Virus record (IMG/VR): IMGVR_UViG_3300046542_000291
Span: 1 to 64,000 of that record
Length of the DNA stretch: 64,000 nt
Strand: one strand, 5' to 3'
Every line of letters begins with the position of its first letter. The first letter of the stretch is position 1. The notes beneath the pieces were generated by a model. That model was given only the letters and a program-made list of their open reading frames with translations. It made no database searches and was not told the DNA's origin. The position numbers and the translations under genes were made by a program. Positions 9,901-50,722 of the stretch are shown one piece after another.

Positions 9901-10854
9901 TTACAGGGTGGTCGATGTCACCAAATCTTGATCCAGAATGTAGCGTTCAGCACGCTCACGCTGTTTCGGGGGTAGGTAGTCCCCATTCAACATCGAACGG
10001 GCAAGGTCTGCATCGGAATCTTTCTCGACATCCAAACGGGAATCTTCATCTTCCCGCTCACGGATCTCCATGACACCGGAAGTAGAGATGTCACCGAGGT
10101 AGTGAACACCTGGGTCGATCCAGTTGCTGAAGTCTTCGATACCAAAGGCACGCAGCACTTCTCGGATGTAGCCTTTCTTGAACGCCGCCAGGTCATGAAT
10201 ACCCAGAGCCGCTGCCATGTCGTAGTTGACATCTTCAACAGTACGTCGGCTCCACTTCACTTGTGGGTGAAGGTCAGTGATCGTCTCTGCCAAGATGGCA
10301 ATGACCTGACTGATTGGATAGACCGCGAACTGCTGTTCGAATGCGTCTGTAAGCTTTTCCAGCATTTGACTGAGATCAATCCGAACGAACTCTTCGTGAT
10401 CCAGTCCCATCATCTTGTCGTATTCCAGCACACGATGATCGTCACCTTCTACCAGCACGATACTGGTGCCGGTGTTCATTACCTTCCACTGAGTCCAAGA
10501 CACGCGGTTGGCAACAGTATTTACTTGTATGGCAAGATCGTCGTAAAGTGCTTGGAGCCACTTTGGCTCGAACAGCTTTTCAGCCAACTTTACTTGTCTG
10601 TGGAGAACGGTATCAACCGAAGTACCGAACAAGATTGCTGCACGCATGACATCCCAGTCTACATGCGCTTTCATGTTCTTATTGCGTTGGTCCATCAGTT
10701 CACCGACGATGCAGTGAACGACCTGCAGCGCGATCCGTTTGTTCGGTTGAACCATCCCGCTCAGCGAATGCTGATTTTGTGCATGCTTCAGGTAGTCAAG
10801 CATCACATCTACCTGATGTCGCACATTCAGGACAATCAACTTATTATCCGACAT
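9901..10854 (-). CDS. hypothetical protein (317 aa)
   Basis: GAGAGG SD, long ORF. Confidence 0.8.
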   Translation of the reverse strand: MSDNKLIVLNVRHQVDVMLDYLKHAQNQHSLSGMVQPNKRIALQVVHCIVGELMDQRNKNMKAHVDWDVMRAAILFGTSVDTVLHRQVKLAEKLFEPKWLQALYDDLAIQVNTVANRVSWTQWKVMNTGTSIVLVEGDDHRVLEYDKMMGLDHEEFVRIDLSQMLEKLTDAFEQQFAVYPISQVIAILAETITDLHPQVKWSRRTVEDVNYDMAAALGIHDLAAFKKGYIREVLRAFGIEDFSNWIDPGVHYLGDISTSGVMEIREREDEDSRLDVEKDSDADLARSMLNGDYLPPKQRERAERYILDQDLVTSTTL

Positions 10855-49085: not shown

Positions 49086-49097
49086 TGTAATAGTATA
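49086..49097 (+). promoter_or_regulatory. TGTAATAGTATA promoter-like motif, copy 1
   Basis: Identical 12-mer repeated at 49161 and 50538. Confidence 0.6.
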
Positions 49098-49147
49098 CGT
49101 GGATATTGTGCCCTCTTTGAGAAACAGTACCACCAGAGCCGAGAATT

Positions 49148-49172
49148 AAAATACTCTGCTTGTAATAGTATA
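49148..49172 (+). promoter_or_regulatory. AAAATAC-N6-TGTAATAGTATA promoter-like motif, copy 2
   Basis: Upstream of tRNA-Tyr; resembles the phiKZ middle AAanntTAC element. Confidence 0.6.
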
Positions 49173-49268
49173 CGGAAGCACTGTCGTAACGCCTAAGATT
49201 GAGTCCAGCAGCGCCTAGAGCGCGGCATAGAAAACTTTCTCTTAACGTTGCTATGGTGTTATCCTGTC

Positions 49269-49353
49269 GGGTGTGTTGGGGAGTGGCCAAACCCAGGAGA
49301 TTGTAAATCTCCCGTCGCTGACTTCGCAGGTTCGAATCCTGCTGCACCCACCA
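49269..49353 (+). tRNA. tRNA-Tyr(GTA)
   Basis: Class II cloverleaf, GGAGA-TTGTAAA-TCTCC, GCAGG-TTCGAAT-CCTGC, A73, encoded CCA. Confidence 0.95.
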
Positions 49354-49539
49354 ATTCCGGGAATGCTCTATTAGAGTGTGCCTAAAGAATCTCTTGAGAT
49401 ATACGCCCTTAACGGTACGCTCGACCTTGTCCTATGGATAACCTCGACTGCTATGAGAAGCGAAGAATGTGGTTGGTAGCGGCCCTCTCAAGTAAGATAG
49501 CTAGGTTAATGCCAGCTTAGCAAGTTACCGTGGTTTAAT

Positions 49540-49608
49540 GCCAGCGTAGTTCAATTGGTAGAACACCGGCTTAGCCGGAGGTTGTGGGTTCGATTCCCGC
49601 CGCAGGCT
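49540..49608 (+). ncRNA. tRNA-like element A with truncated anticodon arm
   Basis: GCCAGCG/CGCAGGC acceptor, GTTC/GAAC D arm, GTGGG-TTCGATT-CCCGC T arm; anticodon arm only 13 nt (CCGGC-TTA-GCCGG); no CCA. Confidence 0.8.
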
Positions 49609-49609
49609 G

Positions 49610-49719
49610 CTGATCAGAAGGCTAGCAATAGCAGAACTAAAACGAGGCGCCGGTACGCGCCTACCCAACTAACGAACGACCTGACGCGCAGGGTAATCAG
49701 TGGTTGGGGAACTGGTCAG
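49610..49719 (+). ncRNA. structured RNA, copy A
   Basis: Stems CTGATCA/TGGTCAG, GCTA/TAGC, GGCGC/GCGCC, CCCAAC/GTTGGG; linkers identical to the copy at 50201-50310. Confidence 0.8.
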
Positions 49720-49863
49720 GTAAAGAATACCCCTCTGTTGGTGGAGCGAGGCAGAGTTGGCGGCGTTAGTGATACGCAGCTGGGTTATTTGGTCTTAAGT
49801 GATCAACATCGCGGCACATTTTACCGGAGCAATGCTGGGACTAGTGCCTTACATTGTTTCATT

Positions 49864-49940
49864 GCGATCATAGCTCAGTTGGTTAGAGTACTTGCCTGTC
49901 ACGCAAGGGGTCGCGGGTTCGAGTCCCGCTGGTCGCGCCA
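49864..49940 (+). tRNA. tRNA-Asp(GTC)
   Basis: Canonical cloverleaf, CTTGC-CTGTCAC-GCAAG, G73, CCA. Confidence 0.97.
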
Positions 49941-49959
49941 TATTCACTGGAGATGTTTC

Positions 49960-50121
49960 ATGAAAGTCAAGATCCACCAACGCCCTCTTAAGGTCATGGG
50001 TCCAGCCGAATGTCGCTGCTGCGACCAACTCAGCTGGAAAGATTTGAAACTGGATAAGCAAGCATTGAAAGAAGCCGTTAACGATACAGCTTACGCTCTC
50101 GATAAACGGCGAGCAGCATAG
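49960..50121 (+). CDS. 53-aa peptide with CRCC (MKVKIHQRPL...)
   Basis: GGAGA SD; sits between tRNA-Asp and tRNA-like element B. Confidence 0.6.
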   Translation: MKVKIHQRPLKVMGPAECRCCDQLSWKDLKLDKQALKEAVNDTAYALDKRRAA

Positions 50122-50123
50122 AC

Positions 50124-50199
50124 GCCACCTTAGCTTAAATTGGTAAAGCGCCTCTACCGTAAGGTTTAGGAGATTGCAGGTTCGATTCCTGCGGTGGAT
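50124..50199 (+). ncRNA. tRNA-like element B with GNRA-capped anticodon arm
   Basis: GCTT/AAGC D arm, GCAGG-TTCGATT-CCTGC T arm, CCACC/GGTGG acceptor core; anticodon arm CCT-CT-ACC-GTAA-GGT-TT-AGG; no CCA. Confidence 0.75.
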
Positions 50200-50200
50200 G

Positions 50201-50310
50201 CCCGATAGAAGGTTCTTCGGAACAGAAGTAAAACACGGCGTCATTACACGCCGATCTAGTAAACGCGACCTAGCGATCGTAGGGTAATCAGTTACTAGAG
50301 AACTATCGGG
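50201..50310 (+). ncRNA. structured RNA, copy B
   Basis: Stems CCCGATA/TATCGGG, GTTC/GAAC (UUCG loop), GGCGT/ACGCC, TCTAGTAA/TTACTAGA; covaries with copy A. Confidence 0.8.
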
Positions 50311-50537
50311 GTACAGAGTACAGTCAGACGGGCGTATCGCAAATGCTGACTGGAACAACCTTCACTGCTTACGAGTCGGGGCAGTTCTAATCGAAAGATT
50401 GATGCAGCTGGTTAAGAGCCCAGTACTGACCACCAAATTCAAAGTTTCAAGCACCGCCTGGTCCAGAAGTTAGCCAGGGTAAAACGGTCATCCAGAGGAA
50501 GCCTGGTATAGCGATCCAAATGTAAATGTTGGTTCTA

Positions 50538-50549
50538 TGTAATAGTATA
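50538..50549 (+). promoter_or_regulatory. TGTAATAGTATA promoter-like motif, copy 3
   Basis: 20 nt upstream of tRNA-Asn. Confidence 0.6.
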
Positions 50550-50569
50550 GGACGAGCATTGCTCCCCAT

Positions 50570-50654
50570 TGGCAAGTACCCGAGTTGGTAGCAGGGGCCG
50601 GACTGTTAATCCGTTTGCGAAAGCACACCGCTGGTTCGAGTCCAGCCTTGCCAG
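50570..50654 (+). tRNA. tRNA-Asn(GTT) with long variable arm, no encoded CCA
   Basis: TGGCAAG/CTTGCCA acceptor, G73, loop CTGTTAA, variable arm TGC-GAAA-GCA, GCTGG-TTCGAGT-CCAGC. Confidence 0.8.
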
Positions 50655-50722
50655 CATTCCGTAAAAGAGTCCAATGGACTCTTTTATTCTGTCTATTAGT
50701 TCGAACCCAGGGAAGAACTTAC

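What the first reader, a model, noticed from the sequence alone, without database searches (positions are those of the whole stretch)
49540..50310. Twin copies of an unrecognised structured RNA, each fused to the 3' end of an anticodon-dead tRNA mimic
Seen: 49610-49719 and 50201-50310 (both 110 nt) share one architecture: P1(7 bp)-GAAG-tetraloop hairpin-AGAA-(C/G)TAAAAC-NN-16-nt hairpin-NA-P4...GACCT-loop-AGGGTAATCAG-P4'-GAAC-P1'. The single-stranded linkers are identical, while the stems differ and stay paired: CTGATCA/TGGTCAG vs CCCGATA/TATCGGG; GCTA/TAGC vs GTTC/GAAC; GGCGC/GCGCC vs GGCGT/ACGCC; CCCAAC/GTTGGG vs TCTAGT/ACTAGA. This compensatory change is strong evidence of selection on RNA structure. 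Both copies start exactly one G after the discriminator T of a tRNA-like element that lacks CCA and has a non-functional anticodon arm. I cannot match the fold to HDV/theta, hammerhead, hairpin, twister, T-box, tmRNA, SRP or Y RNA consensus from memory. Inference: a new phage ncRNA class, either a composite tRNA-mimic RNA, a tRNA-3'-processing ribozyme, or an RNA released by RNase P/Z-type cleavage at the tRNA-like module (mascRNA-like punctuation).
Basis: partly seen in the sequence, partly recalled or inferred. Interest (0 to 1): 0.93.

Follow-up and report, generated by a model that had tools for sequence, protein, structure and literature searches.

The report
New phage RNA fused to dead tRNA
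Two copies of a previously undescribed, highly conserved folded RNA sit in a jumbo Pseudomonas phage's tRNA gene cluster, each joined to a tRNA look-alike that cannot decode; about 40 relatives occur in other phages, including cultured ones, and its function is unknown.

Summary
Window 49609-49720 and 50200-50311 (+) are two 81%-identical copies of one ~112-nt fold: a four-way junction (P1-P4) with an internal loop and a distal hairpin, P5. Each copy starts one base after a tRNA-like element that lacks a 7-nt anticodon loop and an encoded CCA.

No Rfam 15 family matches, even at E<=10. A covariance model built from the two copies finds 40 members (39 distinct) in IMG/VR contigs, metagenomes and six cultured phages, where the module is unannotated or lies under a 'hypothetical protein'. 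In these, 96.6% of pair cells are paired, 23 of 30 pairs change on both sides, and about 50 positions are nearly invariant.

The family is phage-restricted and always lies on the tRNA strand. It usually follows a degenerate tRNA with a hypervariable anticodon arm. One lineage is circularly permuted and keeps an internal YrlA-style tRNA-like domain. Vibrio phages carry the module with its own promoter and terminator and no tRNA-like.

This is a real, new phage ncRNA family. My leading reading is a tRNA-scaffolded effector RNA matured by the tRNA-processing machinery. Release by RNase Z or P, and self-cleavage at N73|G1, remain live rivals. Function was not determined.

The parts
49540..49608 (+). 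tRNA-like element A. It has a 7-bp acceptor stem (one A.A mismatch), a D arm with GG, a 5-bp anticodon stem closed by a 3-nt loop (UUA), a canonical T arm and discriminator U. No CCA is encoded.
   Evidence: Rfam tRNA 59.5 bits, with 5 anticodon-loop positions deleted. ARAGORN does not call it. The cloverleaf appears in the MFE fold of the composite.
49609..49724 (+). Module A: G1; P1 49610-49617/49712-49719; J1/2 GAA; P2 49621-49624/49629-49632; J2/3 AGAACUAAAACG 49633-49644; P3 49645-49650/49657-49662; P4 49664-49671/49701-49708, with internal loop ACGAACGA / GUAAUCAG; P5 49680-49683/49689-49692, with loop ACGCG; J4/1 GAA; G112; then the conserved 3' tail UAAA.
   Evidence: Fold z = -3.98. 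Model R1 scores 131.2 bits. Family covariation. Tail conservation.
50125..50199 (+). tRNA-like element B. It has a 5-bp acceptor helix, a D arm, an interrupted anticodon stem capped by a GUAA tetraloop, and a canonical T arm. It is followed by A-U and then G1 of the module. No CCA is encoded.
   Evidence: Rfam tRNA 32.3 bits, against a gathering score of 29. ARAGORN does not call it. Fold.
50200..50315 (+). Module B: P1 50201-50208/50303-50310; P2 50212-50215/50220-50223; P3 50236-50241/50248-50253; P4 50255-50262/50292-50299; P5 50268-50271/50282-50285, with an enlarged loop GCGAUCG; 3' tail UACA.
   Evidence: Fold z = -4.42. R1 scores 132.4 bits. 15 of 30 pairs are compensatory relative to copy A.
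49269..49353 (+). tRNA-Tyr(GTA), upstream on the same strand. Together with tRNA-Asp (49864-49940) and tRNA-Asn (50570-50655) it forms the tRNA array that carries both units.
   Evidence: ARAGORN and Rfam. In module-bearing loci, all 170 real tRNAs are on the module's strand.

Best explanation
These are two paralogous genes of a previously undescribed phage non-coding RNA family. I lean towards a tRNA-scaffolded effector RNA.

Shown:
- The RNA lies on the same strand as the phage tRNA array and inside it. Co-transcription with the array is inferred from this, not demonstrated.
- The conserved part is a ~112-116-nt four-way junction (P1-P4) with a conserved internal loop and a distal hairpin, P5. 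About 50 positions are nearly invariant and P1 and P4 are fixed at 8 bp.
- On its 5' side there is almost always a dedicated, non-decoding tRNA look-alike. It keeps the acceptor, D and T arms (the 'elbow'). Its anticodon loop is destroyed and its anticodon arm is hypervariable. No CCA is encoded, and N73 runs straight into G1 of P1.

Inferred:
- RNase P sets the 5' end at the tRNA-like. The 3' end is set by cleavage at the next tRNA plus trimming back to P1.
- The tRNA-like acts as a natural 'tRNA scaffold'. It provides a processing entry point, protection from nucleases, and a helix that stacks on the G1.G114 end of P1.
- The module is the effector. It adopts a compact tertiary fold that binds a host factor or ligand, or docks on its own P1 end.
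- I lean towards the two parts staying joined, giving a composite RNA of about 185 to 270 nt that is analogous to Y RNAs (YrlA).
For: Real structure and a real family:
- Fold z-scores of about -4.
- 40 hits at 83-132 bits.
- 96.6% of pair cells are paired, 23 of 30 pairs change on both sides, and the covariation score is 0.69 against 0.16 for shuffles, with 0 of 500 shuffles reaching it.
- The 15 highest mutual-information column pairs are all predicted base pairs.
- 27 G-U cells fix the + strand as the folded one.

Not a known family:
- No Rfam 15 hit at E<=10.
- No paper holds the core motifs in a relevant context.

Link to the tRNA array:
- All 170 real tRNAs in module-bearing loci are on the module's strand, and 160 of 170 encode CCA.
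- None of the abutting tRNA-likes encodes CCA, except in L124.
- A T-loop-like motif lies within 30 nt upstream in 36 of 40 members.
- The next tRNA starts 9-21 nt after the module in 9 loci.

The tRNA-like is non-decoding but constrained:
- Anticodon arms have 3-nt, tetraloop or long-insert tips, and the tips are wholly replaced between close relatives (L057 vs L115, L121 vs L122, L062 vs L123). The acceptor, D and T arms stay the same.

The two parts are coupled:
- In the circularly permuted lineage L150/L153 a real tRNA-Phe-CCA supplies the upstream processing site. A permuted tRNA-like domain (T arm, closed acceptor, D arm) is still kept inside the RNA, on top of P1.
- In that lineage P1, P2, G1 and the G opposite it are all preserved.

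The junction is part of the conserved unit:
- G1 and G114 are invariant, N73 is never G, and the tail is Y-A-M-A.

The partner is not phage-encoded nearby:
- No protein family is shared across the loci.
- The Vibrio phage has no annotated RNA enzymes.
Against: - No expression, end-mapping or binding data exist, so the function is inferred.
- Vibrio phages 1.106.O, 1.256.O and 511E55-1 carry the module behind a non-tRNA 5' domain, with their own promoter and terminator. The tRNA-like is therefore not indispensable.
- L124 and L150 place the RNA directly after apparently functional CCA-bearing tRNAs. Those tRNAs must be cut free, so cleavage at this junction does happen in some members.
- The permuted form is a single lineage: two contigs with identical sequence.
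- About 50 invariant positions and fixed helix lengths are more typical of ribozymes or aptamers than of protein-binding scaffolds.
Confidence: 0.4

Rival explanations
1. Self-cleaving ribozyme. The module cuts the phosphodiester between N73 of the upstream helix and its own G1. This resembles theta/HDV-like ribozymes in function (making a tRNA 3' end). In architecture it resembles the hairpin ribozyme: the conserved P4 internal loop, 8 bp from the junction, docks on the loop at the base of the 8-bp P1.
For: - The module always begins exactly one base after the upstream helix or discriminator.
- G(+1) is invariant in 39 of 40 members, N(-1) is never G, and the opposite strand G-Y-A-M-A is conserved.
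- About 50 invariant positions, with P1 and P4 fixed at 8 bp in 39 of 40 members. This level of conservation is typical of ribozymes.
- In L124 and L150 the RNA abuts real tRNAs that need a defined 3' end.
- Theta ribozymes set a precedent for ribozymes placed 3' of phage tRNAs (PMC10879173, found).
Against: - No match to any ribozyme family in Rfam 15 at E<=10. The 5'/3'-closed P1 topology is incompatible with the HDV nested double pseudoknot.
- Most upstream partners are dead tRNAs that have no evident need for a matured 3' end.
- 160 of 170 real tRNAs in these loci encode CCA and do not carry the module.
- In the permuted L150 form, a cut at N|G1 would sever the RNA internally with no obvious purpose.
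- In L124, G1 is a C.
- Catalysis was not tested.
Confidence: 0.2
2. Pure punctuation. The tRNA-like is only a disposable processing signal, as in MALAT1/mascRNA or the MHV68 tRNA-miRNA units. RNase P cuts at its 5' end. RNase Z (RNase BN), or RNase P acting on a P1-based minihelix, cuts after N73. This releases a free ~115-nt module with an exact G1 5' end, and the module acts alone.
For: - The Vibrio phage version works without any tRNA-like and has its own promoter and terminator.
- Real tRNAs can take the upstream place (L124, L150).
- The junction position is fixed at N73+1.
- The anticodon arm is free to vary.
- T4 rnaD and rnaC lie 1 and 6 nt after their upstream neighbours in a tRNA cluster. 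From my own knowledge, they are cut out by the tRNA-processing machinery.
Against: - A phage with 10-30 real tRNAs would not need to keep a dedicated dead tRNA for this. Yet 36 of 40 members do, with the D arm and elbow conserved.
- L150 keeps an internal tRNA-like with a closed acceptor, which cannot be a processing signal.
- There is no single-stranded spacer for RNase E, and P1 starts 1 nt after N73.
- Whether the hosts have an RNase Z able to act here was not tested.
Confidence: 0.2
3. Ligand-binding aptamer or self-assembling RNA. The four-way junction is a riboswitch-like pocket used as a stable sensor or 'sponge' for a small molecule such as a nucleotide signal. Alternatively, the RNA multimerises through the palindromic P5 loop, as ROOL and GOLLD RNAs near phage tRNAs do.
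For: - The junction nucleotides are nearly invariant while the helices covary freely, which is the riboswitch pattern.
- No conserved protein neighbour was found.
- The P5 loop RCGCG is constant in 38 of 39 distinct sequences. The one exception, window copy B, has GCGAUCG. Both contain a palindrome (CGCG or CGAUCG).
Against: - The RNA is not upstream of any consistent ORF. It is followed by tRNAs 9-21 nt away in 9 loci, so it is not a classical cis riboswitch.
- A 5-nt loop is short for a kissing complex.
- The palindrome argument rests on one variant sequence.
Confidence: 0.1
4. Not a functional RNA. The region would instead be protein-coding sequence, a decaying tRNA pseudogene with junk, or a DNA-level element such as an att site, a terminator, or the target or cargo of a homing endonuclease.
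For: - A mechanical ORF (49555-50121, TTG start) spans copy A.
- HNH and GIY-YIG endonuclease genes lie in these tRNA clusters.
- On the minus strand, P3 followed by UAAAAC reads as a terminator-like hairpin.
Against: - The ORF runs through a tRNA gene.
- Family variation consists of compensatory stem changes plus 1-2-nt loop indels. It is not codon-periodic.
- 27 G-U cells would be A.C mismatches on the other strand.
- About 50 positions are conserved across jumbo Pseudomonas phages, ~45-57-kb phages and Vibrio phages.
Confidence: 0.03

Closest known systems
Bacterial Y RNAs (YrlA, Rfam RF02553; D. radiodurans Yrn1)
   Same: Both are modular ncRNAs: a tRNA-like domain with conserved T and D arms but no decoding anticodon loop, joined to a second module. 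Both attachment topologies occur in both groups: via the acceptor position, or via the anticodon position with a closed acceptor (PMC4201824). The permuted member L150 has exactly the YrlA order (T arm, closed acceptor, D arm) and gives a weak YrlA hit.
   Different: The window has no YrlA hit, and L150 scores only 25 bits against a gathering score of 69. The Rsr-binding motif GNCGAAN0-1G is absent. No TROVE/Ro60 gene was seen in the ORFs scanned. The second module here is a conserved four-way junction, not a simple stem.
Phage T4 stable RNAs, species 1 and 2 (rnaC, rnaD)
   Same: Both are paired small stable RNAs of unknown function encoded in a phage tRNA cluster. In T4 they start 1 nt (rnaD, after tRNA-Arg) and 6 nt (rnaC, after rnaD) after the upstream gene. 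rnaC ends in a T-arm/acceptor-like hairpin.
   Different: There is no sequence or structure homology. Model R1 scores at most 5.7 bits across the T4 cluster with filters off. In T4 the tRNA-like part is at the 3' end of the RNA.
Theta (minimal HDV-like) ribozymes 3' of phage tRNAs (PMC10879173)
   Same: Both are structured RNAs placed immediately 3' of tRNAs in phage genomes, starting right after the tRNA body.
   Different: There is no Rfam HDV-family hit. P1 here closes the 5' and 3' ends, which is incompatible with the HDV double pseudoknot. Partners here are mostly dead tRNAs, not suppressor tRNAs. Cleavage is untested.
MALAT1/mascRNA and MHV68 tRNA-miRNA (TMER) units; synthetic 'tRNA scaffold' RNAs
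   Same: A non-aminoacylated tRNA-like element is fused to a functional RNA and used for RNase P/Z processing or stabilisation. This comparison rests on my own knowledge.
   Different: Those are eukaryotic, eukaryote-virus or engineered systems. No bacterial or phage natural example of this arrangement with a conserved 3' four-way-junction module is known to me.
Hairpin ribozyme (four-way-junction form)
   Same: Both have a four-way junction with two adjacent arms that each carry a conserved loop at equal distance from the junction. Both have an invariant G at +1 of the candidate site. This is an analogy drawn from my own knowledge.
   Different: There is no Rfam hit and no shared loop sequences. 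Catalysis is untested.

Membership tests
tRNA (RF00005), for the 5' elements | Cloverleaf that scores above Rfam's gathering threshold | tested here: met
   59.5 bits (49540-49608) and 32.3 bits (50125-50198), against a gathering score of 29.
tRNA (RF00005), for the 5' elements | 7-nt anticodon loop with a readable anticodon | tested here: not met
   Element A has a 3-nt loop, with 5 model positions deleted. Element B has an interrupted stem capped by GUAA. ARAGORN calls neither.
tRNA (RF00005), for the 5' elements | Free 3' end with CCA (encoded in 160 of 170 real tRNAs of these phages) | tested here: not met
   N73 is followed directly by G1-C2 of P1.
HDV-like / theta, hammerhead, hairpin, twister, twister-sister, hatchet and pistol ribozymes | Match to the family covariance model | tested here: not met
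   cmscan of 49200-50700 at E<=10 lists only tRNA and three chance families.
Self-cleaving ribozyme (any class) | Site-specific self-scission that yields 2',3'-cyclic phosphate and 5'-OH ends | not testable with these tools
   This needs an in vitro transcription and cleavage assay.
YrlA / Y RNA | Rfam YrlA model at or above 69 bits | tested here: not met
   No hit in the window. L150 scores 25.2 bits, E = 0.005.
YrlA / Y RNA | Rsr-binding motif GNCGAAN0-1G near the 5' end (PMC4201824) | tested here: not met
   The motif is absent from the family consensus. The nearest string, ACG-NN-CGA, has variable middle bases.
YrlA / Y RNA | Encoded within 4 kb of a Ro60/TROVE gene | tested here: inconclusive
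   There is no TROVE domain among 10 window ORFs or 10 L150 ORFs, and no shared neighbouring protein family. Whole phage and host genomes were not scanned.
T4 rnaC/rnaD | Sequence and structure homology | tested here: not met
   R1 with filters off gives a best score of 5.7 bits, E = 0.75.
tmRNA | tRNA-like domain formed by the 5' and 3' ends, plus a tag ORF | tested here: not met
   ARAGORN finds no tmRNA, and Rfam finds none.
Riboswitch (cis-regulatory) | Located in the 5' UTR of a consistently associated gene | tested here: not met
   The module is followed by tRNAs 9-21 nt downstream in 9 loci. No shared ORF family was found.
RNase P/Z-punctuated RNA (mascRNA/TMER type) | Endonucleolytic cleavage at the tRNA-like's 5' end and after its discriminator | not testable with these tools
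   Only the substrate features are seen: the acceptor/T-arm stack and the fixed N73+1 junction.

The most novel reading that the evidence does not exclude
The module is a new class of small ribozyme. The most likely form is a self-cleaver that acts at the N73|G1 junction, through docking of the P4 internal loop on the base of P1 in a hairpin-ribozyme-like geometry. In this reading phages use it together with a captive tRNA mimic. Equally novel would be a natural tRNA-scaffolded RNA decoy or aptamer that targets a host tRNA-binding factor or an immune signal.
Probability: 0.22. Interest if true: 0.88.

Novelty: new variant of a known kind. Interest (0 to 1): 0.7.

Why it matters
Structured RNAs with about 50 invariant positions and strong covariation are rare, and they usually turn out to be ribozymes, aptamers or RNP cores. 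This one has four notable properties.
- It is found only in phages here, apart from one MAG contig that matches a phage contig. Carriers include nucleus-forming phiKZ-like jumbo phages of Pseudomonas syringae.
- It is welded to a tRNA mimic that evolution has deliberately disabled for decoding.
- It exists in a natural circular permutation.
- It is present but unannotated in cultured, tractable phages: Psa21, D6 and Vibrio phage 1.106.O.

Whatever its function, it bears on an old open question: what the non-tRNA stable RNAs in phage tRNA clusters do. That question has stood since T4 species 1 and 2 RNAs. It may also be a natural precedent for the engineered 'tRNA scaffold'. If the module is catalytic, it would be a new ribozyme class.

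Tried and rejected
Database and homology tests:
- Rfam at gathering and at E<=10 gave nothing but tRNA hits.
- T4 rnaC/rnaD are not homologs. R1 with filters off scores at most 5.7 bits.
- HDV-like topology is rejected on connectivity, because P1 closes the two ends of the RNA.

Search for a protein partner:
- All-vs-all clustering of ORFs from 40 loci found no shared family. The top 'family' is a spurious ORF lying over the RNA itself.
- Pfam scans of window and L150 ORFs found RNR, HNH, GNAT, alginate lyase, phiKZ gp29PR and methyltransferases, but no TROVE, RtcB or RNA ligase.
- The Vibrio phage annotation shows nothing RNA-related.

Tertiary structure and dimer ideas:
- A mutual-information scan found no non-helical column pair above the helix pairs. 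The unpaired columns are too conserved to inform.
- The kissing-dimer idea for the P5 loop rests on a single variant and was left as an idea.

Pattern scans:
- One scan was mis-specified (GNGNAC instead of GRRC) and returned only chance hits.
- The corrected scan found no permuted member beyond L150/L153.
- Bacterial and archaeal genome scans gave 0 hits, then 10. Only one of the 10 is a family member, on a MAG contig whose module matches a phage contig's.

Literature:
- Searches for the core motifs, for tRNA-like ncRNAs in jumbo phages, and in the phiKZ dRNA-seq paper found no description of this RNA.

Resemblances from memory:
- A resemblance to the 23S GTPase-centre sequence and to hairpin-ribozyme loop sequences was considered and dropped as unsupported.
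Full report
**What is in the window**

The region 49200-50700 is a same-strand tRNA array. ARAGORN and Rfam both find tRNA-Tyr (49269-49353), tRNA-Asp (49864-49940) and tRNA-Asn (50570-50655).

Rfam's tRNA model also hits two elements that ARAGORN rejects.
- 49540-49608 scores 59.5 bits. Five anticodon-loop positions are missing, leaving a CCGGC/GCCGG stem closed by UUA.
- 50125-50198 scores 32.3 bits.

One base after each of these begins a 112-nt element, at 49609-49720 and 50200-50311. The two elements are 81% identical. Each folds alone into the same structure, with z = -3.98 and -4.42 and 0 of 200 shuffles folding as well.

The structure is: G1, P1 (8 bp), GAA, P2 hairpin, AGAAsUAAAACG, P3 hairpin (GGCG/CGCC core), one A, P4 (8 bp), an internal loop (ACG..CGA / GUAAUCAG), P5 (4 bp) with a small loop, GAA, the P1 return strand, and a final G.

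Between the two copies, 15 of 30 pairs differ on both sides and stay paired. Folding each tRNA-like together with its module gives a cloverleaf plus the module as the minimum-energy structure. The small corrections are listed under the observation check.

**It matches no family in Rfam 15 or in the searched literature**

- cmscan against Rfam 15 reports only tRNA over these elements, both at gathering scores over the whole window and at E<=10 with lax filters over 49200-50700.
- ARAGORN finds no tmRNA.
- Full-text searches for the core strings, and for tRNA-like ncRNAs in phages, found no description of it.

**It is a family**

A covariance model (R1) built from the two copies alone was run on loci fetched with short core patterns. 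It found 40 full-length matches at 83-132 bits, of which 39 are distinct. The sources are IMG/VR contigs, metagenome contigs and GenBank phages.

- L024 is evidently the window's own contig: a 310-kb contig with identical scores and spacing.
- The cultured carriers are Pseudomonas phages Psa21 and D6, phage TPWB-08, and Vibrio phages 1.106.O, 1.256.O and 511E55-1.
- In these records the module is unannotated, or lies under a spurious 'hypothetical protein'. In D6 the upstream element is labelled 'tRNA-OTHER'.
- Two scans of 185,579 bacterial and archaeal genomes gave 0 hits, then 10. Only one of the 10 is a family member. It lies on a 47-kb MAG contig, scores the same 88.2 bits as phage contig L152, and has an identical module sequence.
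- The window's phage is a phiKZ-like jumbo Pseudomonas phage, about 74-75% identical in the tail-sheath region to D6, RVTF4 and Psa21.

**Covariation**

- On the 40-sequence alignment, 96.6% of pair cells form standard pairs, against 70% in shuffles and 31-48% when partners are slid by 1-3 columns.
- 23 of 30 pairs show changes on both sides.
- The covariation score is 0.69 against 0.16 for shuffles, and none of 500 shuffles reaches it.
- The 15 highest mutual-information column pairs are all predicted base pairs.
- All five helices covary, including P5 in the more divergent members (CCUG/CAGG, CCGG/CCGG, CGUC/GACG, CUAC/GUAG, CAUG/CAUG).
- 27 G-U cells identify the + strand as the folded strand.
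- About 50 positions are invariant or nearly so, mostly in the junction strands, the P3 core, the P4 internal loop and the P5 loop (RCGCG). P1 and P4 are 8 bp in 39 of 40 members.
- Loop indels of 1-2 nt and compensatory substitutions rule out coding sequence.

**Context**

- In the module-bearing loci, all 170 bona fide tRNAs lie on the module's strand, and 160 of them encode CCA.
- The element that abuts the module never encodes CCA, except in L124. N73 (U 19, A 11, C 10, never G) is followed directly by the invariant G1.
- The 3' end is an invariant GG followed by a conserved Y-A-M-A tail.
- A T-loop-like motif lies within 30 nt upstream in 36 of 40 members.
- Most upstream elements have a 7-bp acceptor stem, often starting GCCC, plus D and T arms. 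Their total length ranges from 69 to 157 nt, because the anticodon arm is a short capped stem or a long structured insert.
- Between close relatives the tip of that arm is replaced wholesale, while the rest of the tRNA-like and the module stay nearly identical (L057/L115, L121/L122, L062/L123, L019/L107).
- The next tRNA starts 9-21 nt after the module in nine loci.
- No protein family is shared by the neighbourhoods.

**Three informative exceptions**

1. L124. The upstream element is an apparently functional tRNA-Met(CAU). Its encoded CCA forms the start of a partly mismatched P1, and G1 is replaced by C.
2. The Vibrio phages. These have no tRNA genes annotated. The module sits behind a 113-nt non-tRNA 5' domain that ends in a hairpin followed by UCA. 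It has a sigma-70-like promoter upstream and an intrinsic terminator 22 nt downstream.
3. L150/L153, which are circularly permuted.
   - After a real tRNA-Phe-CCA come the 3' strand of P2, J2/3, P3, P4/P5 and the 3' strand of P1.
   - Next comes a permuted tRNA-like: the 3' half of the anticodon stem, a variable loop, the T arm, an acceptor closed by a small loop, the D arm, and the 5' half of the anticodon stem.
   - Last come A-U-G1, the 5' strand of P1, AAGG, and the 5' strand of P2.
   - All core nucleotides are preserved, and so is the pairing of P1 (8 bp) and P2 (4 bp).
   - Rfam's YrlA model aligns to this permuted tRNA-like at 25 bits, E = 0.005, against a gathering score of 69.
   - A targeted scan found no further permuted lineage.

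**Interpretation**

Shown: this is a conserved, phage-restricted, structured RNA gene family that sits inside tRNA arrays and is joined to a non-decoding tRNA mimic.

Inferred: how it is made, and what it does.

Three facts argue that the tRNA-like is more than a throw-away processing signal.
- These phages have many real tRNAs that could serve as a processing signal, yet they keep a dedicated dead one with an intact elbow.
- The mimic lacks the CCA that the phage's own tRNAs encode, and it has no spacer before P1.
- The permuted lineage keeps a tRNA-like with a closed acceptor inside the RNA, even though a real tRNA supplies the upstream cut.

Two facts argue that the module is the effector and can work without the tRNA-like: the Vibrio arrangement, and the members that sit behind real tRNAs.

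What is common to all members is a helix, then 1-3 unpaired nucleotides, then G1 opposite a conserved G, then P1. The equal and invariant lengths of P1 and P4 would place the conserved P4 internal loop level with that junction. This suggests a loop-loop docking contact. That is my inference, and it was not tested.

I therefore rank the readings as follows.
1. A tRNA-scaffolded composite RNA, analogous to Y RNAs, whose module binds a host factor or ligand: 0.4.
2. Release of the module by RNase Z or P: 0.2.
3. A self-cleaving ribozyme acting at N73|G1: 0.2.
4. An aptamer or a self-assembling RNA: 0.1.
5. Not a functional RNA: 0.03.

None of these can be settled without RNA end mapping and in vitro assays.

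**Comparison with known systems**

- Y RNAs. The closest functional analogues are bacterial Y RNAs, which also combine a tRNA mimic with a second module. According to PMC4201824 they also occur in both attachment topologies. Membership fails on model score and on the Rsr-binding motif. The Ro60-neighbourhood test was only partial, because only nearby ORFs were scanned.
- T4 rnaC/rnaD. These are the closest contextual analogue, being twin stable RNAs of unknown role that start 1 and 6 nt after the preceding gene in a tRNA cluster. They are not homologous.
- Theta ribozymes. These share the position 3' of phage tRNAs (PMC10879173) but not the fold.

**Verdict**

This is a real and well-supported new ncRNA family with an unusual tRNA-mimic fusion and a natural permutation. 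Its mechanism is open.

Noticed in passing
window 50441-50526 (+); also D6 10729-10809, L146 5737-5822, Psa21 (L139 6145-6229, minus strand), L122 2587-2666 (minus strand): A second unannotated conserved element of about 85 nt lies between module B and tRNA-Asn. It is 92.7% identical to phage D6. It has two hairpins, and 7 of its 14 predicted pairs change on both sides. It has no Rfam hit. In D6 and L146 it directly follows the module.
   Followed up: partly
window 49092-49105, 49163-49176, 50538-50551: The box TGTAATAGTATA(C/G) is repeated ahead of tRNA-Tyr (twice) and ahead of tRNA-Asn. AATAGTATA is also seen before tRNA-Asn in Psa21 and L132. It is probably a phage promoter for the tRNA units.
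   Followed up: no
window 49961-50122 (+): A small ORF of 53 aa, with a GGAG ribosome-binding site, is wedged between tRNA-Asp and tRNA-like B. Its stop codon ends 2 nt before the tRNA-like.
   Followed up: no
L150 12850-13112 (IMGVR_UViG_3300024302_000049), and identical sequence in L153: This is the circularly permuted family member. Its internal tRNA-like has the YrlA order (T arm, closed acceptor, D arm), and it is preceded by a real tRNA-Phe-CCA.
   Followed up: yes
tRNA-like anticodon arms in L033, L096, L019, L107 and L137, and in the TPWB-08 group (L023, L014, L103, L141, L145, L034): Long inserts replace the anticodon arm. They carry their own conserved strings (GAGUUCCACCAUUA...UGAAGGUGGUUUAAC, and GACGGAGUAAUUACCC), which may be extra functional motifs.
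   Followed up: no
window 50268-50285 (P5 of copy B), compared with 49680-49692 (copy A): The P5 loop is RCGCG in 38 of 39 distinct family sequences but GCGAUCG in copy B. Both contain a palindrome. This raises the possibility of loop-loop dimerisation that is kept separate between the two paralogs.
   Followed up: partly
L036 2494-2573 (minus strand): The Rfam Proteo-phage-1 RNA (RF03044, 85.7 bits) lies about 1.2 kb from the module in another carrier phage. These tRNA regions hold several ncRNA families.
   Followed up: no
L140 2400-2800 (Vibrio phage 1.106.O, intergenic region upstream of the module): There are many short direct repeats (TTACACGGAA, ATGACACGG) in the 900-nt divergent intergenic region that also holds the module gene. 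They look like operator or origin repeats.
   Followed up: no
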